Positions 5,733-54,240 of a DNA stretch of 64,000 nucleotides are shown in pieces (the stretch's first letter is position 1; the number at the start of each line of letters is the position of its first letter). The position numbers and the translations under genes were made by a program. The notes under the pieces were generated by a model. It saw only the letters and a list, made by a program, of their open reading frames with translations. It was not told where the DNA came from and did no database searches. The stretch spans positions 62,001 to 126,000 of IMG/VR virus record IMGVR_UViG_3300037297_000066; one strand, written 5' to 3'.

Positions 5733-6212
5733 ATGTCGAATCCGACCACTCAGGAACTAGCTATTCTCAGGAGTCGTCTTGTCAAGGCGGTCCAAAAGAG
5801 ATACCTCGTCGGTCAGCCCCAGCGATACCTGCAAATGCTCGTGTCTGAGACGGGTCAGGACGTGGTTCCAGAAGGCGTCAAAAAAGGATCTGCTGCACAT
5901 CTTCTGCAGCTAGTTGACGAAGCTCTAGCCATTCGTTCGGGTGCCAAGAAGAAGGTTGCTCCCAAGGTTGCTCCCAAGGTTGCTCCCAAGGTTGCTCCCA
6001 AGGTTGCTGTGGCTCCCCCTCCTGAGCCTGAGCCAGAACCTGAGGAAGAGGAAGAAGAGCTCGACCTTTCCGTTCTCCCCAGTGTGAAAACCTTGGAGAC
6101 CTTGACCAAGGATGAGCTGTACGAGTACGCTCAGCAGGTAGACCTCGATGGCCGCTCGGCCATGAACAAAGAGGAGCTACTGAGCGCTCTGAAGGCTTTG
6201 AAGAAGGGCTAG
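5733..6212 (+). CDS. Protein with C-terminal Rho_N-like domain and KVAP repeats
   Basis: AAGGAG RBS before ATG 5733; LETLTKDELYEYAQQVDLDGRSAMNKEELLSAL fits the Rho N-terminal-like helical motif. Confidence 0.65.
   Translation: MSNPTTQELAILRSRLVKAVQKRYLVGQPQRYLQMLVSETGQDVVPEGVKKGSAAHLLQLVDEALAIRSGAKKKVAPKVAPKVAPKVAPKVAVAPPPEPEPEPEEEEEELDLSVLPSVKTLETLTKDELYEYAQQVDLDGRSAMNKEELLSALKALKKG
5952..6008 (+). repeat. 12-bp tandem repeat AAGGTTGCTCCC x4.75 (encodes KVAP)
   Basis: Directly visible exact repeats. Confidence 0.95.
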
Positions 6213-37435: not shown

Positions 37436-37642
37436 GGTGTACAGTAGGGGAGCGAAGCCATTTGCGAGAGGTTCAGTGGCAAGAGTTTCCTAGGGACCGC
37501 TCGAAAGTGTGTGTTCCTTGATAGTTAAACCCTGTTTCCTGCTGGTCAGAGTCTGGTGATATAGGGTCAGAAGACCAGAACTGGACAACCTATCGCAGAG
37601 TCCTGTCCAAAGGTCTGATCTGACACCCCCATTTAGGGGTGG
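37436..37642 (+). promoter_or_regulatory. CRISPR leader 1 with class B promoter motif
   Basis: Near-identical to 46955-47161; starts with GGTGTACAGT; abuts the first repeat. Confidence 0.8.
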
Positions 37643-39603
37643 GTCGAGGGAGGAAAATCCTCTCTCGGGAGTTCCAACCTCAGCATGCCTTAGCCGGCGA
37701 GGAAGACCAACACCAGGTCGAGGGAGGAAAATCCTCTCTCGGGAGTTCCAACTCGTCCCTGCCTCTCGTGAGTTGGGATGCACTGTGCGTCGAGGGAGGA
37801 AAATCCTCTCTCGGGAGTTCCAACGCACTAGCGTACGTGTCCTCGGTGGAGCAGGCGGAGGTCGAGGGAGGAAAATCCTCTCTCGGGAGTTCCAACACGA
37901 GGCTTCGGGCTCGCTGGTCCGGGCTGACGTTCGTCGAGGGAGGGTGATCCTCCCTCGGGAGTTCCAACACCGTTCCATCCCCCTGGTGAACCCAACACGG
38001 AACACGTCGAGGGAGAAAAATCCTCTCTCGGGAGTTCCAACGCACTCGTCCACTGCACCGATAGGGGGCTACCCGTATAGTCGAGGGAGGAAAATCCTCC
38101 CTCGGGAGTTCCAACGGCGAGGTCGAGGATCGCCCCCTGCACTACATCCGGGTCGAGGGAGGGGGATCCTCCCTCGGGAGTTCCAACGATGATCGAGATA
38201 TCCCGGGCCACCCTCAGACCAGCTGTCGAGGGAGGGGTTTCCTCCCTCGGGAGTTTCAAGCCACCATGGGTAGACGCGCCAAGCACGCAAGTCGAGGGAG
38301 GGGGATCCTCCCTCGGGAGTTCCAAGCACGTGCCCGGCACTGGCGACGATTCCCGCTTCGATGTCGAGGGAGGGCAATCCTCTCTCGGGAGTTCCAACAA
38401 TGCACCAGTCGTTGACGACGTTCGCTCCAGGTCGAGGGAGGGGGATCCTCCCTCGGGAGTTCCAACTCCTCCCAGCCCCTGAACTGGGCCTCCACTGCCT
38501 GCAGGTCGAGGGAGGGTCCTCCTCCCTCGGGAGTTCCAACCCGTCACCGCTCGGAGAGACGACCATCACCCAAAGGGTCGAGGGAGGGTGATCCTCCCTC
38601 GGGTGTTCCAAGTGGACGCTCCACCGAATCCACGCCACGAGCGAGTGAAGTCGAGGGAGGGGGATCCTCCCTCGGGAGTTCCAACTGCGGGATCTTTGAG
38701 AATGCGGGGGGTCTGTAGTCTGGTCGAGGGAGGGAAATCCTCTCTCGGGAGTTCCAACATCTCCATTCTTTCGGGTTTCGGATGTGAATCTCTTGGGTCG
38801 AGGGAGGGAAATCCTCTCTCGGGAGTTCCAACCTCACCTTGCGATGCCTGTCGGCCGTCACGAGGGCCATGTCGAGGGAGGGAAATCCTCTCTCGGGAGT
38901 TCCAAGATCTGGCTCTTCGCCCCGGACTTCCTGGTACTGAGCGGTCGAGGGAGGGTTTTCCTTCCTCGGGAGTTCCAAGCAGAAGCTCGTGGACGCTGCC
39001 GTGCCTGCCGATCCCGTGTCGAGGGAGGGGGATCCTCCCTCGGGAGTTTCAATCAGACGGATGACGGTCGCGAGGCCCAGTCGAGGGAGGGTCCTCCTCC
39101 CTCGGGAGTTCTAAGAATCGGACGCTAGGGCCATCGCCCCCATAGCCTGTCGAGGGAGGGGTTTCCTCCCTCGGGAGTTTCAAGCCGGATGATGAGGCGA
39201 GGCTCATCAGCGATGTCGAGGGAGGGAGATCCTCCCTCGGGAGTTTCAACCGATCCCACCACCTCTGAGCGAGGCCGATGGCCATGTCGAGGGAGGGGTT
39301 TCCTCTTTCAGGAGTTCCAAGGCCGGGCCCGACGATCGCTTCGTGCAGCCCGACGACGGGTCGAGGGAGGGAAATCCTCTCTCGGGAGTTCCAAGCGAGA
39401 ACAACCGCATGTGGGTACCTGCCGCACCAGGGGTCGAGGGAGGGTCCTCCTCCCTCGGGAGTTCTAACGGGAGTTCAAAATCCACGGCCGGACGTTGTGA
39501 ATCGGTTGTCTGGTGCGTCGAGGGAGGGTGATCCTCCCTCGGGAGTTTCAATCAAGGCTTTTCGCTAATCGAGAGGGATCATTTCCCTCTCGGGAGTTTC
39601 AAT
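37643..39603 (+). CRISPR. CRISPR array 1: about 28 repeats (27 plus 1 degenerate terminal), ~36 nt, unique spacers mostly ~35-38 nt
   Basis: Consensus GTCGAGGGAGG-N5-CCTC(C/T)CTCGGGAGTT(C/T)CAA(C/G); ~73 nt period; degenerate repeat at the right end defines the trailer. Confidence 0.97.
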
Positions 39604-39709
39604 AAGCGATGCTGTCTCGTAAGTTGCTGAAATAACTAGACTACCCAAAAAAGTGTACGTTTAGAGAAAACCCTTGGAAGAATTCGTTCTAGTTGGTGTA
39701 CGGTAGGGC

Positions 39710-40393
39710 ATGCCTACCCCCCCACTAAAACGAGTCTACGTCAGAGCCTGGGCTGAGCTGGGTTGTTGGAACACTCTTTCCCAGCAAGCCGAGCGCATCT
39801 CCAACATCGTACCCACTCATTCGGCCGTTCGAGGTTTTCTACGATCCATCCTTGGGAAATGGGAAACCGACTACCAGGTCCACGAATGTTGGTTGCTCCG
39901 GGAGCCGGAGTTGACCTCCCATGTCGTTAGCGAGGTCAACTTCAAGCCTACGGTCAACCCGCAAAAGCCCGTTCACATTGAAGGGGCTCGCATCATGCGC
40001 ACGAACACGTGCTTGAGAAACCCGGACTATATGTTCGTGTTCACCCCCATGCGTAGTTGGTGGGGAGACAAGGTCTTCCAAAAGGATCCCACCGAGACTC
40101 ACGAAAAGAACTGGAACATGTCAGTGAGGCGGTTGAAGCACGGTAAGCAACACCGACCGCCCTACTTTGGGATGAGCGACTACCCCGCCTCCTATGAATA
40201 CGTTGACAAGCCTCAACTCAAGCCTGTTCCTGTCAACCGAAACCTCGGCATCATGTACTGGGGGATCGACTACGCAGATCCTCAAGAACCCAGCTACTAC
40301 ACCGCCCTGAGCGTTGTGGACGGTGTAGTCCGTTACCCAACGGTAGAAGAAGTCCGGAAGAACGGCCTCAAATTGACGGATAGGCGATCATGA
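39710..40393 (+). CDS. cas5: Type I-C Cas5 (Cas5d/Cas5c)
   Basis: ERISNIVPTHSAVRGFLRSILGK, SEV, RTNTCLRNPDY, RRLKHG...PYFG, NLGIMYWGIDY, VVDGVVRYP match the Cas5c pattern. Confidence 0.9.
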   Translation: MPTPPLKRVYVRAWAELGCWNTLSQQAERISNIVPTHSAVRGFLRSILGKWETDYQVHECWLLREPELTSHVVSEVNFKPTVNPQKPVHIEGARIMRTNTCLRNPDYMFVFTPMRSWWGDKVFQKDPTETHEKNWNMSVRRLKHGKQHRPPYFGMSDYPASYEYVDKPQLKPVPVNRNLGIMYWGIDYADPQEPSYYTALSVVDGVVRYPTVEEVRKNGLKLTDRRS

Positions 40394-42246
40394 TCACAGC
40401 TCTCTACTCGTTTGGTAAGAACCGGGGGCTGGGATTCGATCCCTACTTCCCCCTGAAGCCCCACTACTACCTTCGACTATCTTCTTCGGGATCCGTGCGA
40501 ATCGAACCCATCAAGGAACCTGAGATCCGCCTCCCAGAGAAGTCCGGACGAAGCAGCAACATCGAGGCCAACTTCCTGTACGACACGGCCATGTACGCTC
40601 TGGCCTTCAACGCCATCCGCAAAGAGCGCTTGCTGACTCAGTTCCTGACTTTTTGGGGCAAGACCCTGGAACATCTGACCAACTGCGAAGACGTGGAAGC
40701 ACTGAAAGCCGTGAAGGCATTCTGCGACCAACTGGCCTTGTCAGAAATCTGCTCCGCCGTGAGTCAATGGGAAAAGAGCTCCAAGAAGCGGCTAGTGAGC
40801 CTTAAAGGCCCGAACCGTATCTCGGGTCTTGCTGAGATCCGGAAGGGACTCTCCGAGGTGGCTTTGGAGACCTTCGAAAGTCTAGCCAGTGGAAAACCCC
40901 CGGCCCCCATTCAAAAGGCCATAGGAGATCTGGCTATAGAAGGAGAGCAGTGGGTCATACTGACTTTGGAGGATGACAACACGCCCCTAGCGCTCAGGCC
41001 CAAGCCTTCTGAGCTGTGGGTTCAGCTCCAAAAGCCTACTGACGACAAGCCCACCAGCACCTGCTTGCTCACAGGGAAACCTTGTAAACCAGTCCGACTA
41101 CACCGGGCTCTCAAGGGTGTACCTGGTGGGGACAAAGGGATTCCTCTCATCTCGTTCGAGCAAGAAGTGACCCGCTACAAGGGCCGCAAGAAGGAAGACA
41201 ACTTCCCCATCAGTCGAGAAGCTCACGACACGTATGTAGCGGCCTTCCGGCACATTGTAGATCAGGGGAATGTCTTCGTGAGCATCAACTCCTGCCTCTT
41301 GGTATGGGTAGATGAGGCCGAGCATGACGAGCTCCTAACCCCCCTGCTGACGGTCCTACGATCCAAGGAAAAGGAGGAGGTCAAAGCAGCCTGGGACGAA
41401 GTAGAACGTCTAGACAGCGACGTCACGGTGCATCTGGCCATGCTTCGTAGCTCCAAGGGCCGCATCTCCATCCTAGGCTATCACACGCTTTCCGTGAATC
41501 AGTTGAGGGCCAACCTTCTCCGATTCCACGAAGAGTTCTCCGAGTTCCCAGAGTACACCCCAAGAGGGTTATTTTCCTGGATGCTCAAGAAGAACATCAA
41601 GGGCAAGGACAAGGAAACAGCCAAGCTCTACACCATGGTGACTTTGGCCGTAGTACTAGGGACTCCTTACCCGTTACAGATCTTCCCTAGCCTCATCCAG
41701 TGGATCAAGAACACGGACAGTGCCCTGGACTTGTTCTTGCATCTTACCTGGCTGCGAGCCTACGTCTGCAGGGACTACGGTATTAACCCGCCTCCTATCA
41801 AAAACCCCTTTCAAAAGGAGCCCCTCGTGTGCGAACCACGCATTGAAGAGAACGTCAACCTCAACGAAACCGACATCGGATACAACCTTGGAAGACTGGT
41901 CGCCTTAGACTGCCATCTGCGCAGAATGACCGGCATCAGTGTCAGTGAGATTTCCGAGGTACGTTCAGCCACCAACAACCCTCACATGTACATCAGCCGG
42001 AGCTACCGGATGCTCCCCACGCTGGAGAAGCTGGAGAAGAAGGGATGGGGGAAGCCTCTCAGGGAGATGCGTGAAGAGGTCAAGGCCAAACTTGCTCCTC
42101 TCGTGGCTACTCCCATTCGTCTAACTCTCCTTGAAGAGTCCAGCTTTCAGATGGCCTTCACGTACCAGAAGACCTACCTTCGCCGCTACAACGCTTGGAG
42201 GAAGCAGCAGTACAAGGCCGCCAAGGCTGCTGAGGAAGAGAACTGA
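40390..42246 (+). CDS. cas8c: Type I-C large subunit Cas8c (Csd1)
   Basis: RSSNIEANFLYD, CLLTGK...RLHRALKGV...LISFE...NFPIS, KGRISI, GYNLGRLVAL; ATGA-coupled to cas5. Confidence 0.88.
   Translation: MITALYSFGKNRGLGFDPYFPLKPHYYLRLSSSGSVRIEPIKEPEIRLPEKSGRSSNIEANFLYDTAMYALAFNAIRKERLLTQFLTFWGKTLEHLTNCEDVEALKAVKAFCDQLALSEICSAVSQWEKSSKKRLVSLKGPNRISGLAEIRKGLSEVALETFESLASGKPPAPIQKAIGDLAIEGEQWVILTLEDDNTPLALRPKPSELWVQLQKPTDDKPTSTCLLTGKPCKPVRLHRALKGVPGGDKGIPLISFEQEVTRYKGRKKEDNFPISREAHDTYVAAFRHIVDQGNVFVSINSCLLVWVDEAEHDELLTPLLTVLRSKEKEEVKAAWDEVERLDSDVTVHLAMLRSSKGRISILGYHTLSVNQLRANLLRFHEEFSEFPEYTPRGLFSWMLKKNIKGKDKETAKLYTMVTLAVVLGTPYPLQIFPSLIQWIKNTDSALDLFLHLTWLRAYVCRDYGINPPPIKNPFQKEPLVCEPRIEENVNLNETDIGYNLGRLVALDCHLRRMTGISVSEISEVRSATNNPHMYISRSYRMLPTLEKLEKKGWGKPLREMREEVKAKLAPLVATPIRLTLLEESSFQMAFTYQKTYLRRYNAWRKQQYKAAKAAEEEN
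41827..42246 (+). CDS. cas11: Putative internally translated Cas11c (139 aa)
   Basis: In-frame GTG with AAGGAG 6 nt upstream, shortly before the GYNLGRL helix. Confidence 0.55.
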   Translation: MCEPRIEENVNLNETDIGYNLGRLVALDCHLRRMTGISVSEISEVRSATNNPHMYISRSYRMLPTLEKLEKKGWGKPLREMREEVKAKLAPLVATPIRLTLLEESSFQMAFTYQKTYLRRYNAWRKQQYKAAKAAEEEN

Positions 42247-42378
42247 TCGTTCAGACAACGGAACGCAGACTTTTGCCGAAAAGTACCGCTACAAGGGTTG
42301 ATTAACCCTCAGGTACTTCAGGTATCAGGAGGTATCTCCTGGGAGTCATCTAGATCGAAATCAAAACAGGAGGGCCTC

Positions 42379-43386
42379 ATGGCTCATTCATCGTATCCAA
42401 AAAACAATGACACCAACGTTTCTATCGTCCCCAACCGAATGGAGATCGTGACTCTCACGGAATATCGGGACGGCACTCCCCAACTGGCGCCTGACGAAAA
42501 CGGCACTCGTCAGGATCCCTTCTCTGGTCAAGGCTTGATCACGGGAGTGGGTACCAAGCGCAAGATTCGGGACTTCGCAGCCCTGCTCGGCCAGTCTCTC
42601 TACGTGGCCCGTCGAGCCGTCTTGAGCCACGCCGTCAACGAAGCAGCTCAAGCCCTGGGGGTGGAAGCCGATGCCAACCAGGAGGAAGAAAGCCCTCCCA
42701 TCGACGAGGACAAGGAAACCGAGCCCGAGCCCAAGAGCAAGGGCAAGAGCAAGGGCAAGAGCAAGGCCAAGGGCAAGGCCAAGAAGGAAAAGAACAAGGA
42801 GCTCGATTACGAAGTTGCCCTGAAGGTCAGGGATGAACTGTGCCGACGGTACTGGGACATCCGGGCATTTGGGGCCGTTCTGTGCAGCCCCGTGAACATC
42901 CCCGTTCGAGGGCCTCTCCAAGTTGGGATGGCCAGGTCTGTGGATCCGATCAACCCCCTCACGCTCTCTATCACCCGGGTCGCTGTGGCTACGGACCGAG
43001 AAGCGGAGGAGCAGAAAGGGCGCAACCACACGATGGGCACCCAGACGGTCGTTCCCTACGGGGTCTACCAGCAACACCACTACTACAACCCCCACGACGC
43101 CGAGGTCACGGGCTTCTCCCAGGAAGACTTTGAGATCTACCTCAGGGCTCTCAGGGAGATGCATGACCACACCAGGTCATGCATGCGGACTGAGGTGGTT
43201 CCTAGGAAGATCGTCATCTTCCGGCACAGCTGCCCTTTGGGCAACGCTCCCAGCCACAAGCTGTTCGAGTTGGTCAAGTTGACCAAGAAGCCGGGGGTTC
43301 CTACCCCCACCTGTTGGGAGGACTACGAGTTCAGCGTGGACGTAGAAAATCTACCTGAAGGGGTGGAAATCGAAGTCATCGGCTGA
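42379..43386 (+). CDS. cas7: Type I-C Cas7 (Csd2)
   Basis: ITGVGTKRKIRD, YWDIRAFGAV, VRGPLQV, SITRVAV, TMG...VPYGVY, TGFSQED, LGNAPSHKLF; GGAGG RBS before ATG 42379. Confidence 0.92.
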   Translation: MAHSSYPKNNDTNVSIVPNRMEIVTLTEYRDGTPQLAPDENGTRQDPFSGQGLITGVGTKRKIRDFAALLGQSLYVARRAVLSHAVNEAAQALGVEADANQEEESPPIDEDKETEPEPKSKGKSKGKSKAKGKAKKEKNKELDYEVALKVRDELCRRYWDIRAFGAVLCSPVNIPVRGPLQVGMARSVDPINPLTLSITRVAVATDREAEEQKGRNHTMGTQTVVPYGVYQQHHYYNPHDAEVTGFSQEDFEIYLRALREMHDHTRSCMRTEVVPRKIVIFRHSCPLGNAPSHKLFELVKLTKKPGVPTPTCWEDYEFSVDVENLPEGVEIEVIG

Positions 43387-43395
43387 CCCCGTGGT

Positions 43396-43433
43396 GTATG
43401 GTGGGAGAGACGAGAAAGCCTCTCCCACCATAC
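43396..43433. other. Perfect 14-bp inverted repeat between cas7 and the helicase
   Basis: GTATGGTGGGAGAG-N10-CTCTCCCACCATAC; no U-tract. Confidence 0.85.
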
Positions 43434-43445: not shown

Positions 43446-45470
43446 ATGCCTAGAAGAATCACTCTCCACAACTTCCAGAGCAGAGACGCTAACCGCCTCT
43501 GCCCTCGGTTCGTTGACCACAAGGTCTTCGCTATCATCTACGCTACTGGAGCAGGCAAGACCTTGGAGATAAGGGCCATCGTTTCTAGGCTGTACCACCA
43601 CCGATACGATCCTGAATACAAGGGGTTCAGTTTCACTCACTGTATTTTTGCGGCCCCCCAACGAGTCATCCGAGACAACTTCATTGAGGACATCTCCGAA
43701 CTGGTGGACGGAAACCTAGTCTACCCCTGTCTCAATGTCGTCACCAACGTAAGTCGAGAGGACCTGGAAAGGTTCCTGGGGCAACGCTGGACCGTAGACC
43801 GTATGTGTATGGCGGTCACCCACAGTATCATCGTAAGGCTGATCCCATGGTTGGAAGAGGCCCTGCGTCAAGACCCTAGCTTTCTCGTGGGAAAAATCCT
43901 GGTTATAGACGAAGCTCACCACATTCCGGCCAAGAGGCTGGCCCAACTGTGTCGGTTATGGAAAGACCACGGTGGACATCTGGTACTCCTGACCGCCACC
44001 CCCAGCCATCCTGACATCGAAAAAGTCATCCCTGACAATGCCATCGTAGCTTGCAGAACTCTGCCGGAGCAGATGGAAGGCGGAAAGTACGCCCCCCAGA
44101 TCCTTGAGACCGGTATCATCAACGTCACCGGAGAGGGGTACTCGGACAAGGAGATGTGTGGGATCCCCGTAGACGCAGACACCGCCATTCAGGAGATTGT
44201 AGACGACTACGAAAAGCAATGCCTGGAAGCCAAATGCAAGCCTCGGGCCCTGGTAATCATCCGACCTCGTAAGACCAGAGAAGAGAACCGGAAGATCATT
44301 GAGCGCTTCCTAGAGTGCTTTGAAGCGAAGGGGGACCTGAACGGTCTCGGGAAGATCCGGCCCGTAGTTGGAGTAGGGGCACACAAGTCGGTTATAGGGG
44401 ATGTGTCTGACTGCATCGCTCACGACAAAGCGATTCATTCAGGGGAGCAATGCACCTGCTCGAAGTGCCGAGGGCTCCCGTACCGGAGACTGACCTTCAA
44501 AGACTCCAACTACGATGTCCTGATTCTGATTGGCCGAGGACGAGAAGGGCTGGATACCGTTCTAGCCAGTCACATGTACCTGTTCGGCCTATGCCACTTC
44601 TTGCCTTCGGTGGGGCAGCTTCTGGGACGCATTATGCGTTGGCGTAAAGAGGTTCTCGACTACCCTGACAAGTGGCGGAACAGATCCTACCTCCGCATCA
44701 TCACGGCCGGAGTCAAAAATCTGGCAGCCCACAGTCAGCAGGTACTGTTGACTATGCACTACCTCAACCTCCTAGGCTTGCAACAGTGGAGTGTCCTGAG
44801 CCTAGTCAGCCGAATTGTTGACAAGATGGCTTCAAAGGCAGGCCACCCTCGACTCGGTGGAAAGCGTATTCCCTACATCACCTTGGAGAAGCGAGCCGCC
44901 ATTCTCACCTACCATAGTGAGATGATGAAGTGGTACAACGAAGGCTCTTCTCAGAATGAGCGAAATCACGGGGCCCCCCTCAACAAAGTACTGACTCGTA
45001 ATGAGCAGGCTAAGCTCACACTCAGTAGGATAGAGTTGGGTTGCCTCAGGCTAAAAGGAGCCCCTAAGGACAAGATCACCGAAGCAGAGATCCTCTTGGT
45101 CCTCACTGACCTTGAAGCCTCCTTCCACCGTGAGCAAAAAGAGGCCCTCCAAAGAGAGTTGTGGAAAGCCTTGGAAGAGCTGTTGCCCGAGGAAGGGGTG
45201 ATGAGTGCCGTCAACAGAGCTCTGGTTCAAGTGGCCTCCTCATTCCGAGAAGCCACTCTAAGCTACTCCCTGCTTGCCAGCCGGGTTCAACAGGAAATCC
45301 TGAGCTTGACTACTGAGCATATTGAAGACTTCTCAGCCCGCTTGGACGAGGCCCTCAAGAACAGCACGGCTCAAGCAGAAAAGAAACTGGAGACCCGCTA
45401 CGGGTACTCCCCCGGAACCTTGGAGACGTTCCGAAGAACCATAGCCAACCACCCGCCGGGTGTAAGATGA
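43446..45470 (+). CDS. SF2 DEAH helicase, restriction-enzyme/RadD-like rather than Cas3; no HD domain
   Basis: YATGAGKT ~30 aa from the start, IDEAHH, LTATP, GREGLD, QLLGRIMR; Cys-rich insert CTCSKC. The alternative start 43398 lies inside the hairpin. Confidence 0.85.
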   Translation: MPRRITLHNFQSRDANRLCPRFVDHKVFAIIYATGAGKTLEIRAIVSRLYHHRYDPEYKGFSFTHCIFAAPQRVIRDNFIEDISELVDGNLVYPCLNVVTNVSREDLERFLGQRWTVDRMCMAVTHSIIVRLIPWLEEALRQDPSFLVGKILVIDEAHHIPAKRLAQLCRLWKDHGGHLVLLTATPSHPDIEKVIPDNAIVACRTLPEQMEGGKYAPQILETGIINVTGEGYSDKEMCGIPVDADTAIQEIVDDYEKQCLEAKCKPRALVIIRPRKTREENRKIIERFLECFEAKGDLNGLGKIRPVVGVGAHKSVIGDVSDCIAHDKAIHSGEQCTCSKCRGLPYRRLTFKDSNYDVLILIGRGREGLDTVLASHMYLFGLCHFLPSVGQLLGRIMRWRKEVLDYPDKWRNRSYLRIITAGVKNLAAHSQQVLLTMHYLNLLGLQQWSVLSLVSRIVDKMASKAGHPRLGGKRIPYITLEKRAAILTYHSEMMKWYNEGSSQNERNHGAPLNKVLTRNEQAKLTLSRIELGCLRLKGAPKDKITEAEILLVLTDLEASFHREQKEALQRELWKALEELLPEEGVMSAVNRALVQVASSFREATLSYSLLASRVQQEILSLTTEHIEDFSARLDEALKNSTAQAEKKLETRYGYSPGTLETFRRTIANHPPGVR

Positions 45471-46183
45471 ACCTTGTAAAATTCAACAAACAGCCCTGGA
45501 GGTTGCGAACCTTTCAGAGCATGCGTAGTGAAAGCAGATTGTGGGATGGGTTTAAGCTGCGAGGGATCTACGCAGAGATGACAGCTCTTTCTGGCCACGA
45601 AATGTACCTCATCCTAAAAGAACACAAGGCTCTTGAAAAGCCTTACTACTTCGTAGGCTCTGATCTCAATGTGAAAGTCTACGTAGAACTCAGGGAAGAC
45701 AAGGAACGTGGGAAAATCCCGTGGACGGTAGCCTTCGGGGACATCATTCAAGTAGTCCAACAGATCATCCACAACAAGGATGGCCTCCCTGTTGCCGTTC
45801 TGAACATGGATGGGTTTGATCAGGTAGGGGGAAGCAAGTGGTGGAGTGAGACGGCCTCCCCCCTCGTAGAGATTGTCGAGGATTCCGTCAGGCGTCTAGG
45901 CAGTTTCATGTTGATTCTCAACAAGACCCTCGACACCCGAACCAAGAGTGATCCACTAGAGGCTTTGAGAACCCAGACGGCCCTCCTTTGCAAGGTCTTC
46001 GGCAAACGTTGGCCCTTGAGTCATAGCGACATCGTAACAGACATCCCCCCAGAAGTAGCCAACCGCAGCTTCGTAGGAGACGTGGGCGCCTTCCAGATCT
46101 ACAAGAGCAAAGGACGCCAGCTTCGAATGGCTACCTTGAGACTGGCTTTTCAACCCAGAAGAATTGTGGCCAAGCTTAGCTAG
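45467..46183 (+). CDS. Hypothetical, possible class I SAM-dependent methyltransferase-like fold
   Basis: Strand order YAEMTALSG / FVGSDLN / AFGDI / VLNMDGF mirrors motifs I-IV; ATGA-coupled to the helicase. Confidence 0.5.
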   Translation: MNLVKFNKQPWRLRTFQSMRSESRLWDGFKLRGIYAEMTALSGHEMYLILKEHKALEKPYYFVGSDLNVKVYVELREDKERGKIPWTVAFGDIIQVVQQIIHNKDGLPVAVLNMDGFDQVGGSKWWSETASPLVEIVEDSVRRLGSFMLILNKTLDTRTKSDPLEALRTQTALLCKVFGKRWPLSHSDIVTDIPPEVANRSFVGDVGAFQIYKSKGRQLRMATLRLAFQPRRIVAKLS

Positions 46184-46211: not shown

Positions 46212-46421
46212 ATGTCCAAATCCAAAGACAGCTTCAACTCCGACGTCGTTCTCACGTTCGCCCAAAAGGCCAAGCGCTTCACGACTCAAGGTGTAGCAGG
46301 ACGCTTCAAGGTCCCCAAGCAGAGGGCCGCAGCGTGTATCGCCATCCTTCGTATCAAGGAAGTGGTCGAGTCCGACGGCAAGACCAGAGACGGCGACAGC
46401 AAGTGGGTCTACTGCGGGTAA
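46212..46421 (+). CDS. Small winged-helix DNA-binding-like protein
   Basis: AGAGGA RBS; FTTQGVAGRFKVPKQRAAACIAILRIKEVV plus a C-terminal beta hairpin. Confidence 0.55.
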   Translation: MSKSKDSFNSDVVLTFAQKAKRFTTQGVAGRFKVPKQRAAACIAILRIKEVVESDGKTRDGDSKWVYCG

Positions 46422-46954: not shown

Positions 46955-47161
46955 GGTGTACAGTAGGGGAGCGAAGCCATTTGCGAGAGGTTCAGTGCTA
47001 CCCGTAGCCTAGGGACCGCTCGAAAGTGTGTGTTCCTTGATAGTTAAACCCTGTTTCCTGCTGGTCAGAGCCTGGTGATACAGGGTCAGAAGATCAGAGC
47101 TGGACAACCTATCGCAGAGTTCTGTCCAAAGGTCTGATCTGACACCCCTATTTAGGGGTGA
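46955..47161 (+). promoter_or_regulatory. CRISPR leader 2 (duplicate of leader 1)
   Basis: Same sequence apart from one 11-nt block and about 7 scattered substitutions. Confidence 0.8.
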
Positions 47162-49116
47162 GTCGAGGGAGGGCAATCCTCTCTCGGGAGTTTCAACGAG
47201 CGACAACATCGTGCGGACCGTCGCCAGCTGCAACGTCGAGGGAGGGGGATCCTCCCTCGGGAGTTTCAACCGGGGCAGCTACCTTCCTTTCGAGCGGTAC
47301 ACGTTGGGTCGAGGGAGGGGATCCTCCCTCGGGAGTTTCAACGTAGCTCACGTAGGCGTTCTCGGAATCGCCGGTACCTCGTCGAGGGAGGGTCCTCCTC
47401 CCTCGGGAGTTCCAAGCAGCTACTCGACGCTTTGGGCAAGCCGAATGACATCAAGTCGAGGGAGGAAAATCTTCCCTCGGGAGTTCCAAGGAGCTCGGGT
47501 CCAGGTGACTCAGACTGGTACATCTGGGTCGAGGGAGGGGATCCTCCCTCGGGAGTTCCAAGTAGGTAGTGCTCGACTGGCGTGGTCATTCGGCCTCTAC
47601 GTCGAGGGAGGGGATCCTCCCTCGGGAGTTCCAAGTGGACCACCTCGGGTGGCAGTCGCCCCGATACTAGGGTCGAGGGAGGAAAATCTTCCCTCGGGAG
47701 TTCCAAGAGATCGTCGGACATCACACCACCTCCAGCAGCTGCGAGGTCGAGGGAGGAAAATCTTCCCTCGGGAGTTCCAAGGAACGAAACTGACGGATAC
47801 TCAGCCAGCGCGTTAACGGTCGAGGGAGGGGGATCCTCCCTCGGGTGTTTCAACGAAGGACGGACACAGCAAGCCACGGACAGAGGTCGAGGGAAGGAAA
47901 TCCTCCCTCGGGAGTTCCAACTGACCCGCCTTTCGGGCAAGAGCCGCCTGGCTCGTCGAGGGAGGGTGATCCTCCCTCGGGAGTTTCAACCCGAACGCGG
48001 TAGTGGCAGCCGTGCCCCACCCCACGTCGAGGGAGGGTCCTCCTCCCTCGGGAGTTCCAACACCATATCGAAGGGAGCAGAAGCCATGAAGCAGAGTCGA
48101 GGGAGGAAAATCTTCCCTCGGGAGTTCCAAGGTACGCGAGCCTCGCGACGGTTCTGACCACAGGTGTCGAGGGAGGAAAATCTTCCCTCGGGAGTTCCAA
48201 GTCGGGGTAACGCCGTTGGCCTTGCGGCGAGTCGAGGGAGGGGTTTCCTCCCTCGGGAGTTCCAAGAGTTTGCTCAGCCGGGGTGGGTGCGTCGGAGTGC
48301 GTAGTCGAGGGAGGGGTTTCCTCCCTCGGGAGTTCCAAGATCAGCGTTCAGCGCCCATGAGATTTGATCGTGATGAGTCGAGGGAGGGTCCTCCTCCCTC
48401 GGGAGTTCCAAGTCGGGACCAGTGCCCCAGACCGCGCTGAAGTTGATGTCGAGGGAGGAAAATCTTCCCTCGGGAGTTCCAAGAGAAGCCTCGTCCCCCT
48501 TCTCCCTTTCTTCTTCCAGCGTCGAGGGAGGGGGATCCTCCCTCGGGAGTTTCAACTAAAGACCGCCGCGTCTTCCAGTTCCGCCACGAGCGGTCGAGGT
48601 AGGGGGATCCTCCCTCGGGAGTTTCAAGTTGTACACGGTGGTCGTCCCCACCTTGAGGGCACGGTCGAGGGAGGAAAATCTTCCCTCGGGAGTTCCAAGG
48701 AGGACTACCAGGCGAGGCAGGCCAAGGACGTGTTCAAGGTCGAGGGAGGGGGATCCTCCCTCGGGAGTTCCAAGACGCCCGGACCTGACGAGCCCGTAGT
48801 CCCTCCAGAAGTCGAGGGAGGGAAATACTCCCTCGGGAGTTCCAAGAGCGCCCTGATGCGTCTGGATGAAAGCTTCGCTGCCGTCGAGGGAGGAAAATCC
48901 TCCCTCGGGAGTTCCAAGAGGACGGACGACGGACGCCATTCTGTCGCTTGCTTCTTGTCGAGGGAGGGTCCTCCTCCCTCGGGAGTTCCAAGAGCTAGTC
49001 ATCCCACGGGCGTTCCGTTCGACTCGAAGTCGAGGGAGGGGGATCCTCCCTCGGGAGTTCCAAGAATGTCAGGAAGCAGTGTCGAGGGAGGGAGATCCTT
49101 CCTCGGGAATTTCAAT
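47162..49116 (+). CRISPR. CRISPR array 2: about 28 repeats, same repeat family as array 1
   Basis: Counted by eye; last spacer is only ~16 nt and the last repeat is degenerate (GAATTTCAAT). Confidence 0.97.
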
Positions 49117-50093
49117 CAATCAATCAACAACGACTCGATCAGAAGTCTCTCGTGCCAGGTCTTTCTGGGATCCGAGACCTGTTTCCACACGGACTCGAAG
49201 GACTTGTTCACGAGACGGCTCCAGTAAATGCGTTCCCCCGTGTCCAACCGCATCAAACTGACGACAGTGGCATCAATCAAGAGCACCCGGTGAACCAACC
49301 CGATGTCTCTCCGGGCCACCCAAGCACCAAGAGTGCACCACTCGGGAAGAGCACACCCCCGCACTGAAGTAGAGACAGGGTAGTGCCCCCTCAAAGGACT
49401 GTTAGAGGAGTGGCGCAGGAGCGAAGGTCCATTTGAGGAAACGAAGCTGACTTCAGTGAAGGTGATCCCAGTCTGGTCAGGGCCTCTGCCAGGGTCCACG
49501 CCCATCACTCTTCTAGAGGGATCAAAAGGCACGTTCGCTCCCATGGATACTGCCACATCTCCCCCGGCCCTCAAAATTGGTTGTACACCGGCAGGAATTA
49601 CCGTCTCTGCCTCTGGGAGAGCTCTTTCTACTATCGGGAGAGCTCCTTCTGGCAGTTCCTCAACCGAGAAGACCCTCCTCCCTATCGAAGTGTAGTCCAA
49701 CCTTTGGCGTAGAGGAGGGATCAAGGCTTGGAGACTTGTCCCCATCCCGCTCCAATCCCGTCTGCCTTCTCGGATGTAGTTTTCTACGATGTTCCGAAAG
49801 TCATCCCGGTTCTGGTTGGGACCAGACCTCCGGAAGGTTTCCCCAAAGGTCAACGGAAACGGATTAGCACCTCTGCGGTGTTCTTCTAGGAGCTTAAGTA
49901 GCCTGGAATCCTGGGGTCCCTCACACCCCTCACGAAAAGTTACCCGAACCTCGATTTCTCTGGTAGAAGGGATCACCGCAGGAACTTCTACCCGTTCCAC
50001 GTGAGGATCCGATTGGAGCGTAACCACATCTCCCCGGAGATTGATCCTATCGTCCAAAGAACGCAGGAAATAAACCAAGATCCAGGTTTCCAC
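49116..50093 (-). CDS. Hypothetical with W-tag variant (KTWHERLL)
   Basis: 325 aa ORF whose stop abuts the terminal repeat. Confidence 0.65.
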   Translation of the reverse strand: METWILVYFLRSLDDRINLRGDVVTLQSDPHVERVEVPAVIPSTREIEVRVTFREGCEGPQDSRLLKLLEEHRRGANPFPLTFGETFRRSGPNQNRDDFRNIVENYIREGRRDWSGMGTSLQALIPPLRQRLDYTSIGRRVFSVEELPEGALPIVERALPEAETVIPAGVQPILRAGGDVAVSMGANVPFDPSRRVMGVDPGRGPDQTGITFTEVSFVSSNGPSLLRHSSNSPLRGHYPVSTSVRGCALPEWCTLGAWVARRDIGLVHRVLLIDATVVSLMRLDTGERIYWSRLVNKSFESVWKQVSDPRKTWHERLLIESLLID

Positions 50094-50455: not shown

Positions 50456-51772
50456 ATGACACCCAAACGAATTGCACTCTTGGTCACCTCTCTCATCGTG
50501 ATGGGGGTGGTAACGATCTTGGGCTTCAAGGTCGTATGCAACGTGGACGACACCGAGATCGTCGTCCTGCAAGAACTCGACGGCGACATGGAAGTATGGA
50601 GTACTGCCGGTTGGCGCTACCAGGGATTTGGGAAGGTCACCCGTTACCCCAAGTCTCAGGAGTACACCTTCCAGCATCAAGAAGACGACCAAGGCACCAT
50701 CACCAGCACGAAGGAATGCTTGCCCATCCGCTTCAACGACAAGGGCAAGGCGGTGATTTCCGGCAACCTGTCTTGGGACATGCCGACAGATCCCGAACAG
50801 GTATTGGCCTTGCACAGCAAATACCGAAACTCTGAGGGTATCGAGAATCGGCTCGTGAAACCCGCCGTGAATCGAGCCATCTACCACTCCGGCCCCCTGA
50901 TGTCATCCAAGGAATCAGCAGGACAACGTCGTGGTGAGTTGATTCGGTTCATCCAAGATCAAGCCATCCAGGGCGTCTACAAGACCGTTTCCCGAGAGGT
51001 CGAGGAAATCGACCATCTGGCTCCTCCCGTGGAAGTAGTCGAAAAGGTCAGGGAAGCGAAGCTCGACGACAAGGGTGACCCAATGCTCGACGACAAGGGC
51101 GATCCCATCATGATCGAGGTCCCCAAGAAGGTGAAGAAGCCGGCCACCAAGAAGATCACCGTCTACGAGCCTGAAATGAAGGACGGTCAACCCTTAGTGG
51201 AAGAGGAAAGCAACGCCACGAAGTTCGGAGTTCTCCTCCACAACATCACGATCAAGAGCATCATCTACGAGCCCAAGGTTCAGGAACAGATCAACGCTCA
51301 ACGTGACATGGAGATGTCTGTCCAGACCAAGATCGCTGAAGCCAGCAAGGCCAAGCAAGATGCTGTGACGGCTGAGGAAAAAGGGAAGGCTGAAGCTGCC
51401 AAGGCCAAGTGGGAGCAGGAAGTCAAGAAGGCCCAGGCCCTCACGGCTGCCGAACAAAAGCAGGAAGTGGCCAAGAAAGACCTAGAGGCCGCCAAACTTG
51501 AACGTGAGGCTGCGATCGAACGAGCCAAAGGCGAGTCCGAGGCCAAACGACTCGTGATGCAAGCTGACGGGGCCCTTCAGCAGAAGTTGGCAGCCTGGGT
51601 CGAAGTGCAAAAGGCATACGCTGCTCAGATGGGCAAACAACGATGGGTGCCGACTATCCAGATGGGAGAAGGTTCGAGTGGAGGGGGAGCTGCTGCCGGT
51701 TTCATGCAACTCATGCAGGCTCAAGCTGCACGTCAGCTCAACCTCGACATGCAGATGGGTAGAAAGAGATAA
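50456..51772 (+). CDS. SPFH/band 7 domain protein
   Basis: N-terminal TM, IRFNDKGKA...SWDMP...LVKPAV, coiled-coil AEA/AKA tail; AAGGA RBS. Confidence 0.85.
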   Translation: MTPKRIALLVTSLIVMGVVTILGFKVVCNVDDTEIVVLQELDGDMEVWSTAGWRYQGFGKVTRYPKSQEYTFQHQEDDQGTITSTKECLPIRFNDKGKAVISGNLSWDMPTDPEQVLALHSKYRNSEGIENRLVKPAVNRAIYHSGPLMSSKESAGQRRGELIRFIQDQAIQGVYKTVSREVEEIDHLAPPVEVVEKVREAKLDDKGDPMLDDKGDPIMIEVPKKVKKPATKKITVYEPEMKDGQPLVEEESNATKFGVLLHNITIKSIIYEPKVQEQINAQRDMEMSVQTKIAEASKAKQDAVTAEEKGKAEAAKAKWEQEVKKAQALTAAEQKQEVAKKDLEAAKLEREAAIERAKGESEAKRLVMQADGALQQKLAAWVEVQKAYAAQMGKQRWVPTIQMGEGSSGGGAAAGFMQLMQAQAARQLNLDMQMGRKR

Positions 51773-53003: not shown

Positions 53004-53411
53004 TTGATTCCCAAAGTCGGCTCCTGGTGGCGAACCAAGAGCGCCCAGTGGCCCAGTACGGCTTTTTTACTCACAGGCTTCAGGGACGTCTTCCACGAGG
53101 TGGTTTCCATCACTGAAGAGGACGTCTGCCTGATCCAAAACGGAGCGGACCGGCCCTACTTCATCCCCAAAGACGAATTCGACCAAGGAAAGTTCAAGCC
53201 TTTCCGGCCCCGAGGCTCAATACCTTCGTGGGTGAGACCGGGGGTCCTTTTTCGTAGACCCCGGGGAAAAACCTGGACAGTCACGACGGTTCGAGGAAGG
53301 TTCTTCACCGCCGAGATCAGGTACGGCACCTTTCGGTTCTTCAGTCCTGACGAGATTTCGAACTTACGGCCGTACCTGACGTGGCACGAGCGACTTCTAT
53401 CTACAGATTGA
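53004..53411 (+). CDS. Hypothetical with W-tag variant (LTWHERLL)
   Basis: Two SH3-like repeats; tag. Confidence 0.6.
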   Translation: MIPKVGSWWRTKSAQWPSTAFLLTGFRDVFHEVVSITEEDVCLIQNGADRPYFIPKDEFDQGKFKPFRPRGSIPSWVRPGVLFRRPRGKTWTVTTVRGRFFTAEIRYGTFRFFSPDEISNLRPYLTWHERLLSTD

Positions 53412-54240
53412 GGAACTGCGAGCTTCCCTCGTTCGGCCGAGCGTGGAGATAGCGGCTAGTAGTCGCCACGTTGGCGTGCCCGAGGGTTGCTTGCACGAGG
53501 TGTATGGGGGCCCCGTTGTCCAGGGCATGGCTAGCATGAGCGTGACGCAGCCAGTGAGGGGAAGCCTTCTCGCCGATGGCATCAGCGGTCTCGTAGATGA
53601 TCTGCCGAGCTTCTCGGACACACAGAGGGTTGCCTCGCCGGCTCTTGAACACGAGGCTATGGTCGGTGTCGTTCTTCCAACGAAGTTTTCGGAGCTCGTT
53701 GACGAACTGGGCAGAGAGCTTGACGGTTCGGGTCTTACCGCCCTTCCCGTGGAAGGTGACCCTGTCGATGCTCAGGTCCGCCCATGTAAGGTTCACGGTT
53801 TCGGTGATACGGGATCCCGCCGCATATAGCAGCTTGATGAGCAGGTAGTTGCGGCCAGGCTCTGCTGCGGCCAGCAATCCCTGAACGGTTTCCTCGTTCA
53901 GGATTCTCTCGTGGAGAGTGTCTCTCACTGAGGGGGCCTTCAGGATGAGGGCCACGTTGAACACCGTGTAGCCGGTCTGGTGAGCGTACTTCATGAGGCT
54001 CTTGACCGAGCGGATCCGGCGGGCCTTCGTCGCTGGGGAGCCCACCAGGGATTCAGCATAGCGAACCACGTGGTCCACCTTGGCTTCCTGAAGACCTACA
54101 TTCTCCGACTCTAGGAACTCCAAGAACATCTGGGCATCCCGGGAGTACGCTATGGCTGTATTTTCAGGACGACCCGACAGCCAAAGTTGAACCAAATGCT
54201 TGTCGGAAGTAGCGCCGGAGTAGTTTTCAGGAAGCCGCAT
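53401..54240 (-). CDS. Tyrosine recombinase, XerC/XerD-like
   Basis: GSRITE (R), GKGGK (K), PHWLRHAHASH, LGHANVATTSRY (HxxR, H, Y). Confidence 0.95.
   Translation of the reverse strand: MRLPENYSGATSDKHLVQLWLSGRPENTAIAYSRDAQMFLEFLESENVGLQEAKVDHVVRYAESLVGSPATKARRIRSVKSLMKYAHQTGYTVFNVALILKAPSVRDTLHERILNEETVQGLLAAAEPGRNYLLIKLLYAAGSRITETVNLTWADLSIDRVTFHGKGGKTRTVKLSAQFVNELRKLRWKNDTDHSLVFKSRRGNPLCVREARQIIYETADAIGEKASPHWLRHAHASHALDNGAPIHLVQATLGHANVATTSRYLHARPNEGSSQFLNL

What the first reader, a model, noticed from the sequence alone, without database searches (positions are those of the whole stretch)
43446..45470. Non-Cas3 SF2 helicase sitting in the Cas3 position
Seen: Walker A lies ~30 aa from the N-terminus, leaving no room for an HD domain. 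Motifs ATGAGKT / DEAH / TATP / REGLD / QLLGRIMR resemble restriction-enzyme (HsdR/Res)- and RadD-type helicases more than Cas3 (typically SAT, QR.GR..R). It has a Cys-rich insert (CIAH...CTCSKC) and a ~200 aa helical C-terminal extension. Inference: a recruited translocase that could load at Cascade R-loops, conceptually like CasDinG in type IV-A. Caveat: a 14-bp hairpin separates it from cas7, so the linkage could be incidental.
Basis: partly seen in the sequence, partly recalled or inferred. Interest (0 to 1): 0.75.

Follow-up and report, generated by a model that had tools for sequence, protein, structure and literature searches.

The report
Non-Cas3 helicase–methyltransferase pair on phage Cascade
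A 437-kb wetland phage carries a type I-C CRISPR system in which Cas3 is replaced by an unrelated motor protein and a small methyltransferase-like partner; the helicase swap was noted in one sentence in 2020, but its mechanism is still unknown.

Summary
Window 43446-45470 encodes an intact SF2 ATPase with no HD domain and no Cas3 signature. It follows cas5c-cas8c-cas7c, and the operon lies between two CRISPR arrays of about 27-28 repeats each. The host record is a complete 437-kb phage with no Cas1, Cas2, Cas4 or Cas3. The linkage is not incidental. In all nine homologous lineages (24-30% identity) that have upstream sequence, the helicase directly follows cas7. This "helicase instead of Cas3" type I-C variant of huge phages is already published (Al-Shayeb 2020), and others have suggested it is nuclease-free. 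Four points are new in the literature I could search. (1) The next gene (45467-46183) is a conserved partner with a class I SAM-methyltransferase fold and invariant cofactor-binding motifs. (2) The helicase-partner pair also occurs without any cas genes, and once as a single fused protein. (3) The Cascade-linked helicases fall on one side of a well-supported split and are the short forms, lacking the roughly 300-aa C-terminal extension of most stand-alone forms. (4) Modelling places the partner on the helicase's helical C-terminal domain (score 0.76, best control 0.00). Most likely this is a nuclease-free, Cascade-recruited translocase-methyltransferase effector. The mechanism is inferred, not shown.

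The parts
37436..37642 (+). Leader of CRISPR array 1, one of two copies
   Evidence: A 243-nt direct repeat, 37436-37678 versus 46955-47197, is 93% identical and runs into the first repeat of each array.
37643..39609 (+). CRISPR array 1: 27 repeats of about 36 nt, a degenerate terminal repeat, and spacers mostly 31-39 nt
   Evidence: Repeat consensus is GTCGAGGGAGGGGGATCCTCCCTCGGGAGTTCCAA(C/G).
39710..40393 (+). cas5c (227 aa)
   Evidence: Pfam Cas_Cas5d 7e-9; PADLOC Cas5c 6.5e-23; below the NCBIfam cut-off.
40390..42246 (+). cas8c/csd1 (618 aa)
   Evidence: Pfam Cas_Csd1 2e-50; PADLOC Cas8c 5e-45.
42298..43386 (+). cas7c/csd2 (362 aa)
   Evidence: TIGR02589 1e-66, above its cut-off; Pfam Cas_Cas7 1.5e-59.
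43396..43433 (+). 14-bp intercistronic hairpin between cas7c and the helicase gene
   Evidence: -34.7 kcal/mol, z -4.9. No T-tract. Similar hairpins follow cas7 in L011 and L014.
43446..45470 (+). SF2 DEAH-type ATPase/translocase (674 aa from this start), not Cas3
   Evidence: Pfam ResIII 1.3e-8 and DEAD 6.7e-7 only. Motif positions. AF2 model. Fold and profile neighbours. Residues 512-549 (44931-45044) form the predicted partner interface.
45467..46183 (+). Conserved 238-aa partner with a class I SAM-methyltransferase fold; its start overlaps the helicase stop by 4 nt
   Evidence: AF2 model pLDDT 86.6, pTM 0.87. All fold hits are methyltransferases. Present after the helicase in every Cascade-linked locus with downstream sequence. 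E37, G43, D66, D115, N152, Y212 and R225 are invariant or nearly invariant in 124 family members.
46212..46421 (+). Small conserved ORF (69 aa from its ATG; the open frame begins at 46164) found in a subset of these loci
   Evidence: Homologous to ORFs that follow the partner gene in L004, L010 and L017 (HMM E 5e-34 to 1e-58). No Pfam hit.
46955..47161 (+). Leader of CRISPR array 2, the second copy
   Evidence: repeat family D7.
47162..49115 (+). CRISPR array 2: 28 repeats

Best explanation
This is the effector module of a phage-borne type I-C CRISPR-Cas variant that lacks both Cas3 and adaptation genes. Cas5c, Cas8c and Cas7c would build a crRNA-guided Cascade from the two flanking arrays. 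Cas3 is replaced by a two-subunit machine. One subunit is an SF2 ATPase whose core resembles duplex-tracking translocases (HsdR, RadD, RIG-I, FANCM, Snf2). The other is a small class I methyltransferase-fold protein predicted to sit on the ATPase's helical C-terminal domain. The pair is an older, self-standing module that also occurs with no cas genes nearby, in loci that look phage-like. Partner-family members also occur in Planctomycetota metagenome-assembled genomes, where the helicase link was not checked. One helicase lineage, made up of short forms without the roughly 300-aa C-terminal extension typical of stand-alone forms, became attached to Cascade. Inferred mechanism: Cascade forms an R-loop on a competitor's or the host's DNA and recruits or activates the motor. 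The motor then translocates using ATP. No nuclease domain is detectable, so interference would come from blocking or stripping transcription and replication complexes, as in type IV-A CasDinG. The methyltransferase-fold subunit would either modify the tracked nucleic acid or act as a SAM-binding regulatory subunit. What is shown: gene content, conserved synteny, folds, motif conservation, and a gene fusion. What is modelled: the helicase-partner contact. What is inferred: recruitment by Cascade, translocation, the nuclease-free outcome, and any methyl transfer.
For: Cas5c, Cas8c and Cas7c are identified. Two arrays with duplicated leaders flank the operon. The complete 437-kb phage has no Cas1, Cas2, Cas4, Cas3 core or Cas3 HD. 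The order cas7-helicase-partner holds in the window and in L001/2/3/18, L004, L010, L011, L012, L014, L015 and L017, at only 24-30% helicase identity. Arrays follow the partner gene in L001 and L012. All ATPase motifs are intact and conserved. The nearest profile and fold neighbours are HsdR, XPB, RadD, RIG-I/MDA5, FANCM, Mfd and Snf2 enzymes, not Cas3 or DinG. The partner has a methyltransferase fold, with motif I (E37..G40..G43), motif II (D66) and motif IV (D115) invariant or nearly so. A homologous partner follows non-CRISPR helicases in L013 (hhalign 97.9%, E 6e-13), L025 (E 1e-37) and L020, and is fused to the C-terminus of P0022 (residues 967-1132). All Cascade-linked helicases lie on one side of a split with 99% SH-aLRT support. 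Complex model: ipSAE 0.76 against a best control of 0.00. That mark was reached by 58 of 80 solved complexes and 2 of 110 mismatched pairs. The interface involves helicase residues 512-549.
Against: Nothing here tests contact between the helicase and Cascade. One of the three complex runs placed the partner elsewhere. No protospacer was found, so the targets are unknown. The partner lacks the DPPY, NPPY or PCQ catalytic motifs of DNA methyltransferases and matches no Pfam family, so it may not methylate DNA, or may not be an enzyme at all. Failure to detect a nuclease domain is negative evidence. The helical C-terminal domain and the small sixth ORF have unknown functions, and the host could supply Cas3 in trans. 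Fold similarity between two-lobe RecA cores is generic and cannot assign translocation polarity or substrate.
Confidence: 0.55

Rival explanations
1. RNA-guided epigenetic marking is the main output. Cascade loads the translocase-methyltransferase pair, which methylates DNA along the track away from the protospacer. This would mark the target for a modification-dependent nuclease, or silence or protect it.
For: The partner has a methyltransferase fold with invariant cofactor-binding motifs. Conserved basic residues (K8, R12, R220, R225) are compatible with a nucleic-acid substrate. Adjacency, a gene fusion and a predicted physical complex tie the motor to the methyltransferase-fold protein. 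A Type ISP restriction-modification enzyme that combines a motor and a methyltransferase is the top Foldseek hit for the helicase.
Against: No DNA-methyltransferase catalytic motif is present and no Pfam methyltransferase family matches. Structural matches are to small-molecule, peptide and RNA methyltransferases at modest scores (Z about 12, TM 0.4-0.5). SAM binding was not scored in the complex run.
Confidence: 0.2
2. Interference is still degradative. The phage Cascade, or the helicase pair, works with a nuclease supplied in trans: a host Cas3 or another phage or host nuclease. The helicase only assists.
For: The phage also lacks Cas1, Cas2 and Cas4 yet holds about 53 spacers, which suggests it depends on host Cas proteins. 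No nuclease is detected in the operon.
Against: The helicase-partner pair takes the effector's place in every one of about ten diverged lineages, and none of the fetched flanks (up to 10 kb) carries cas3 or an HD gene. A stand-alone version of the pair exists without Cascade.
Confidence: 0.15
3. The linkage has no functional meaning. The helicase and partner are phage replication, recombination or anti-restriction genes that merely sit beside cas7c.
For: Relatives occur in phage-like, non-CRISPR contexts. The only PHROG hit is a generic 'DNA helicase' family. A hairpin separates the gene from cas7.
Against: The gene order is conserved in 9 of 9 lineages at 24-30% identity, with cas7-helicase gaps of 3-13 nt in most loci, overlapping helicase and partner genes, and arrays directly downstream. 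The Cascade-linked forms group together on the tree.
Confidence: 0.05
4. It is a highly diverged Cas3' (helicase-only Cas3), with its HD partner lost or unrecognised.
For: It has a DEAH-type SF2 core and sits in a type I locus. There are weak matches to Cas3 chains (E 1.5e-4) and to PADLOC Cas3e (E 0.0098, covering only the DEAH region).
Against: Many unrelated SF2 groups score far better than Cas3. No Cas3 appears in the top 50 fold hits. There is no match to TIGR01587 or Cas3_HD anywhere in the genome. The family has a non-CRISPR branch with the same methyltransferase-fold partner.
Confidence: 0.03

Closest known systems
[quoted passage not shown] 2020, PMC7162821)
   Same: The paper's description fits this locus: phage-encoded, Cas5d-like Cas5, lacking Cas1 and Cas2, and 'a helicase protein instead of Cas3'. 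A later preprint lists it among presumed nuclease-free systems of mobile elements.
   Different: The two published phages also carry a CasPhi system. This genome has only the two arrays of one repeat type. The text of that paper never mentions a methyltransferase; its figures could not be seen. I found no description of the partner gene, the stand-alone module or the fusion in the searchable literature.
Type IV-A CRISPR-Cas with CasDinG
   Same: Both are carried on mobile elements, lack adaptation genes, and pair a Cascade-like complex with an SF2 helicase instead of a nuclease. They are presumed to interfere without cutting DNA.
   Different: This helicase is not DinG/XPD-like. No DinG chain reaches E 1e-3 against the family profile, and Pfam matches are ResIII and DEAD only. 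The Cascade here is type I-C, not Csf. Type IV-A has no methyltransferase-fold subunit.
Type I and Type ISP restriction-modification motors (HsdR with HsdM; LlaBIII/LlaGI)
   Same: The best sequence-profile match is an HsdR (3h1t, 6e-11), and the top Foldseek hit is LlaBIII. In both, an SF2 motor is physically coupled to a methyltransferase-fold subunit or domain.
   Different: There is no room for an N-terminal nuclease domain, because Walker A lies about 33 aa from the start. No HsdM-type or other Pfam methyltransferase family matches the partner, and no HsdS is recognised among the neighbouring genes scanned. Targeting would come from crRNA rather than a specificity subunit.
Canonical type I-C Cascade-Cas3
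   Same: Cas5c, Cas8c and Cas7c are present with hairpin repeats, and there is no Cas6. Related loci have repeats ending in ATTGAAAT.
   Different: There is no Cas3 or HD domain and no cas4-cas1-cas2. Cas5c and Cas8c score below the NCBIfam cut-offs.
RadD (E. coli accessory SF2 repair helicase)
   Same: It gives the highest structural Z-score (19.4 over about 340 residues).
   Different: Identity is only 12-14%. The Cys cluster in the window protein is not conserved in the family. The C-terminal domain differs, and the genomic context is unrelated.

Membership tests
Cas3 (type I signature helicase-nuclease) | Cas3-type SF2 core recognised by Cas3 family models (TIGR01587 cas3_core, PADLOC Cas3) | tested here: not met
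   No NCBIfam hit. PADLOC Cas3e scores only E 0.0098 over about 40 residues at the DEAH motif. TIGR01587 finds nothing in the whole genome. Cas3 chains rank far below HsdR, XPB and RIG-I.
Cas3 (type I signature helicase-nuclease) | HD nuclease domain, fused or encoded as a separate Cas3'' | tested here: not met
   Walker A begins about 33 aa from the start. PF18019 Cas3_HD finds nothing in the 437-kb genome.
Type I-C CRISPR-Cas | Cas5c + Cas8c + Cas7c effector genes next to a CRISPR array | tested here: met
   for the genes; for the arrays.
Type I-C CRISPR-Cas | Cas3 effector and a cas4-cas1-cas2 adaptation module | tested here: not met
   Searches find none in the complete phage genome. It is therefore a variant, not a canonical member.
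Type IV-A / CasDinG | DinG/XPD-type SF2 helicase with Csf-type effector proteins | tested here: not met
   Pfam matches are ResIII and DEAD only. No DinG or XPD chain appears among the 61 PDB sequences at E<=1e-3. The effector genes are type I-C.
HsdR (type I restriction motor subunit) | N-terminal PD-(D/E)xK nuclease, ResIII motor, and assembly with HsdM/HsdS | tested here: not met
   The motor similarity is real (ResIII 1.3e-8; 3h1t 6e-11). There is no N-terminal domain. The partner matches no HsdM or other Pfam methyltransferase family.
Class I SAM-dependent methyltransferases (the partner, 45467-46183) | Seven-stranded Rossmann-like methyltransferase fold | tested here: met
   AF2 model pLDDT 86.6. 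All of the top Foldseek and VIA-align matches are methyltransferases, with Z up to 12.3. An AFDB family member reaches TM 0.76.
Class I SAM-dependent methyltransferases (the partner, 45467-46183) | Cofactor-binding motifs: motif I acidic residue plus Gly-rich loop, motif II acidic residue, motif IV residue | tested here: met
   E37 and D115 are invariant. G40 is G in 123 of 124 members (A in the window protein), G43 in 122 of 124, and D66 is D or E in 124 of 124.
Class I SAM-dependent methyltransferases (the partner, 45467-46183) | SAM binding and methyl transfer to a defined substrate | not testable with these tools
   SAM was included in the complex run but not scored. Motif IV reads D-T-T or D-G-F, not DPPY, NPPY or PCQ. 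No Pfam family matches.

The most novel reading that the evidence does not exclude
A phage uses a crRNA-guided Cascade to load a translocase-methyltransferase pair onto chosen DNA. The pair then writes a base modification processively along the target. This would be natural RNA-programmed epigenetic marking, used for silencing, decoying or sensitising a competitor's or the host's DNA, and derived from a stand-alone motor-methyltransferase module also found without cas genes in phage-like loci.
Probability: 0.15. Interest if true: 0.9.

Novelty: new member of a known kind. Interest (0 to 1): 0.6.

Why it matters
Type I systems are defined by Cas3, so a conserved lineage that swaps Cas3 for an unrelated motor is one of the few natural cases of Cascade re-tooling. 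The others are the CRISPR-associated transposons, the HNH fusions and the type IV systems. The swap was reported in a single sentence in 2020 and has no known mechanism. This work shows that the replacement is a two-protein unit, a motor plus a methyltransferase-fold subunit, with its own evolutionary history outside CRISPR. That turns "an unidentified helicase" into a concrete, testable effector hypothesis. If the effector is nuclease-free or writes a modification, it would be a compact, programmable, non-cutting DNA-targeting machine. It would also give a view of how huge phages fight competitors or reprogram hosts.

Tried and rejected
- **Cas3 membership:** rejected.
- **DinG-like helicase:** rejected.
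- **Known defence systems in PADLOC:** the helicase gave only trivial DEAH-region hits and the partner gave none.
- **Zinc finger from the Cys-rich insert:** rejected as a family feature, because the cysteines occur only in the window protein.
- **Hairpin as a terminator or operon boundary:** rejected. It has no T-tract, and similar hairpins recur after cas7 in L011 and L014.
- **Helical C-terminal domain as a Cascade-specific dock:** not supported. The domain is shared by non-CRISPR relatives.
- **Spacer targets:** no self-targets and no match in 50,697 phage records.
- **Second CRISPR system in the genome:** no other array found. A CasPhi gene was not searched for directly.
- **Pattern scans with the partner alignment or the 25-sequence helicase alignment:** these failed because no stretch was conserved enough.
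- **Scan of 185,579 species genomes:** only one weak hit, but the scan relied on a single peptide pattern.
- **C-terminal extension of the long stand-alone forms:** no informative match.
- **RNA-seq evidence:** only wetland DNA runs hold the sequence.
Full report
**What is in the window.**
The window is bases 62001-126000 of a complete 437,331-bp virus record with direct terminal repeats. DNA runs from wetland metagenomes hold the sequence.

Around the finding lies one compact CRISPR-Cas locus on the + strand:
- a 207-nt leader (37436-37642);
- array 1 (37643-39609, 27 repeats plus a degenerate terminal one);
- cas5c (39710-40393), cas8c (40390-42246) and cas7c (42298-43386);
- the helicase gene (43446-45470);
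- a 238-aa ORF whose start overlaps the helicase stop by 4 nt (45467-46183);
- a small ORF (46212-46421);
- a second copy of the leader (93% identical over 243 nt);
- array 2 (47162-49115, 28 repeats).

The whole phage genome has no match to Cas1, Cas2, Cas4, the Cas3 core or the Cas3 HD domain. It has no other CRISPR array. No spacer matches the phage itself or any of 50,697 deposited phage records.

**Checking the observation.**
- Q-motif;
- Walker A (ATGAGKT), 33 residues after the ATG at 43446;
- DEAHH, TATP, REGLD and QLLGRIMR.

All of these are conserved across homologues, so the ATPase is probably active. There is no room for an HD domain and none is detected.

The AF2 model (pLDDT 78.4, pTM 0.73) shows two RecA-like lobes followed by an all-helical region from about residue 440 to the end.

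The Cys cluster (C339, C352, C354, C357) is specific to this protein and is absent from all homologues, so it is not a family feature.

The longest ORF begins at 43398. Homologues, and the database copy of the protein, begin at the 43446 ATG. This places the perfect 14-bp hairpin (43396-43433; -34.7 kcal/mol, z -4.9) in the 59-nt gap after cas7.

One wording point rests on my own knowledge of the usual operon order. In canonical I-C operons cas3 precedes cas5. The gene therefore sits where cas4-cas1-cas2 would be, not literally in the Cas3 position.

**It is not Cas3 and not DinG.**
Pfam finds only ResIII (1.3e-8) and DEAD (6.7e-7) in the N-terminal lobe. NCBIfam finds nothing. PADLOC gives only trivial hits at the DEAH motif.

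A profile of 25 family members was searched against all PDB sequences:

| Match | E-value |
|---|---|
| HsdR (3h1t) | 6e-11 |
| XPB | 5e-9 |
| MDA5 | 5e-8 |
| RadD | 4e-7 |
| Brr2 | 5e-7 |
| Cas3 | 1.5e-4 |
| DinG | no hit at E<=1e-3 |

Foldseek puts Type ISP LlaBIII, Chd1/ISWI, HsdR, XPB and RadD on top. VIA-align gives RadD (Z 19.4), Mfd, FANCM, RIG-I/MDA5 and INO80/Snf2h. No Cas3 chain is in either top 50.

The caveat is that similarity between two-lobe SF2 cores is generic.

**The linkage to Cascade is conserved, not incidental.**
The family is small. An exhaustive phmmer search of 1.84 billion cluster representatives gave 227 hits at E<=1e-3, and only 8 at E<=1e-30. I fetched genomic context for the nearest relatives, which are 24-30% identical. 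The loci fall into three groups:
- **Full set of genes.** L001/L002/L018 (one lineage), L004, L012, L014 and L017 show cas5, cas8c, cas7, helicase and the 210-270-aa ORF, in that order.
- **Partial, cut by contig ends.** L003 (the L001 lineage again), L010, L011 and L015 are cut upstream but still show cas7 immediately before the helicase.
- **No upstream sequence.** L005 has no upstream sequence to check.

This makes 9 of 9 informative lineages, counting the window. The cas7-helicase gaps are only 3-13 nt in most loci. L001 and L012 have CRISPR arrays directly after the partner gene, with repeats ending in ATTGAAAT. None of the fetched flanks contains cas1, cas3 or an HD gene.

The only two other loci with a cas7-helicase gap longer than 50 nt (L011, L014) also carry a strong 13-bp hairpin there (z -4.5 and -5.6). 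None of these hairpins is followed by a T-tract. I read them as intercistronic elements that may set the ratio of abundant Cascade subunits to effector. That reading is an inference.

**A second, overlooked component.**
The 238-aa ORF after the helicase is conserved in every one of these loci at 24-32% identity. It matches no Pfam, NCBIfam, PHROG or PADLOC family.

Its AF2 model is confident (pLDDT 86.6, pTM 0.87). All structural neighbours are class I SAM-dependent methyltransferases:
- one AFDB cluster representative at TM 0.76 and 26% identity;
- PDB methyltransferases at Z up to 12.3 over 160-180 residues.

The cofactor-site positions are invariant or nearly so across 124 family members:
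- E37 at the end of beta-1, followed by a Gly-rich loop (G40, G43);
- D66 at the end of beta-2;
- D115 at the end of beta-4.

So are K8, R12, N152, D156, Y212, R220 and R225. The window protein alone has A at position 40.

The catalytic motifs of DNA N- or C5-methyltransferases are absent. The fold and a preserved cofactor pocket are supported. The substrate, and whether the protein has any activity, remain unknown.

**The pair predates its association with CRISPR.**
An HMM of the partner finds a homologue directly after more distant, longer helicases that have no cas genes nearby:
- L013, after P0015 of 960 aa (hhalign 97.9%, E 6e-13);
- L025, after P0023 of 958 aa (E 1e-37);
- L020 (E 1e-11);
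- more weakly, a 427-kb phage record, L007.

In P0022 (1160 aa) the partner domain is fused to the helicase C-terminus, at residues 967-1132. L022 is an exception with no detectable partner.

The partner family has at least 123 clusters at 90% identity. Most members are 237 aa. The few carrying NCBI names come from Planctomycetota or Gemmataceae metagenome-assembled genomes.

A maximum-likelihood tree of 76 helicases places all eight Cascade-linked ones with known context, plus the window, on one side of a split with 99% SH-aLRT support. That side holds 35 rows, 28 of them short forms of 570-735 aa. The long forms lie almost entirely on the other side. The window protein sits on a long branch, so its exact position within that side is unsure.

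The helical region after the RecA lobes is shared by the whole family. The long forms add about 300 further residues of unknown function. A plausible reading is that Cascade took over the targeting role of that lost extension. This is inference only.

**Predicted physical contact.**
I co-folded the helicase, the partner and SAM, with controls. The tool's verdict was that the model supports binding but does not show it:
- median ipSAE 0.76 against a best control of 0.00;
- that mark was reached by 58 of 80 solved complexes and 2 of 110 mismatched pairs in the tool's calibration, which holds only roughly here because my own alignments and a ligand were used;
- two of three runs agree (72% shared contacts) and one differs;
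- the interface joins helicase residues 512-549, inside the helical C-terminal domain, to partner residues 60-107.

Together with adjacency, overlapping genes and the natural fusion, this makes a heterodimer likely.

**How it most likely works.**
These points are shown:
- a Cascade gene set with arrays;
- an intact SF2 ATPase and a methyltransferase-fold partner fixed in the effector position across diverged lineages;
- no detectable nuclease or adaptation genes.

These steps are inferred. Cas5c processes the repeats and Cascade forms R-loops on target DNA. The R-loop complex recruits or activates the motor-partner pair. ATP-driven translocation then interferes with transcription or replication without cutting, by analogy with type IV-A CasDinG. 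The partner either modifies the tracked nucleic acid or acts as a SAM-binding regulatory subunit.

I put about 0.55 on this general picture and about 0.15-0.2 on methylation being the actual output. The rivals are a nuclease supplied in trans (0.15), an incidental linkage (0.05) and a diverged Cas3' (0.03). They are set out with their tests in the Rival explanations section.

**Relation to what is known.**
Al-Shayeb et al. [quoted passage not shown] They also show a helicase tree with "the unidentified helicase". [quoted passage not shown]

The core finding and the CasDinG analogy are therefore already in print, and this window is a further member of that kind. Unlike the published phages, it shows no second array that a CasPhi system would need.

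I found no mention of the methyltransferase-fold partner, the stand-alone or fused module, or the small sixth ORF in the literature I could search. Figures and the 2022 Cell paper on virus-encoded CRISPR systems were not readable, so priority cannot be excluded.

**Verdict.**
The kind of system is known but mechanistically unexplored, and the analysis adds a concrete second subunit and an evolutionary origin. Interest 0.6.

Noticed in passing
window 46212-46421 (open frame from 46164): A small ORF after the partner gene is conserved in L004 (6308-6625), L010 (4442-4768) and L017 (9311-9688). It shares a C-terminal KRF(S/T)T..V...F......AA..AILRIK..(V/I)E.DGK motif with the L004 and L010 copies (L017 was not aligned) and may be a sixth component of a subset of these systems. 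It has no Pfam hit, and no homologue was detected in L001, L012 or L014.
   Followed up: partly
window 43396-43433; L011:2698-2735; L014:6507-6544: Strong GC-rich hairpins without T-tracts follow the cas7 stop in the three lineages whose cas7-helicase gap exceeds 50 nt. The L011 hairpin and its tail (CGAGGGG...CCCCTCGGGTTTCAAT) resemble the window's CRISPR repeat, so it might be a solo repeat or a Cas5c site. No L011 array was available to check, and the window's own hairpin does not resemble its repeat.
   Followed up: partly
window 37643-39609 and 47162-49115: The repeats are unusually heterogeneous. At least eight variants are interspersed within both arrays. They differ mainly in the hairpin loop (GGGA, AAAA, GTGA, GTCC, GTTT, GAAA, GCAA, GAGA) and by C/T changes in the 3' stem arm. 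The last repeat base alternates between C and G. Spacer lengths range from 17 to 49 nt. This is odd for arrays in a genome without Cas1-Cas2.
   Followed up: no
window 37490-39128 and 47211-50093: Several long ORFs listed mechanically across the arrays, on both strands, are artefacts of the repeat periodicity and not genes. Examples are 37828-38547 and 48364-49227. The 3' end of 49116-50093 (-) abuts the last repeat of array 2; the ORF has no Pfam hit.
   Followed up: partly
window 42731-42784 (in cas7c) and 41586-41625 (in cas8c): Lys/Gly-rich low-complexity tracts lie inside Cas7c and Cas8c. The Cas7c tract is a 6/12-nt tandem repeat (CAAGGG). Their effect on Cascade is unknown.
   Followed up: no
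L012:5155-6953: In this 197-kb contig, cas8c is split into a 438-aa Csd1 gene and a separate 159-aa gene before cas7. This may be a stand-alone Cas11-like small subunit.
   Followed up: no
window 53401-54240 (-), 50456-51772 (+): A tyrosine recombinase/integrase (Phage_integrase 1.3e-31) and an SPFH/Band-7 protein lie just downstream of array 2 in this 437-kb phage.
   Followed up: no
window 15038-16243 (+), 6209-7321 (-), 10984-11135: Elsewhere in the window there is a radical-SAM protein and an ORF with an endolysin-like C-terminal domain. There is also a 15-nt tandem repeat of 10 copies (TCGTCCTCCTCGTCT) inside an ORF.
   Followed up: no
L013:16825-18820 (-): A second, apparently broken copy of the helicase family (phmmer E 1e-21 and 2e-4 in two adjacent ORFs) lies about 6 kb from the stand-alone helicase-partner pair on the same contig.
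   Followed up: no
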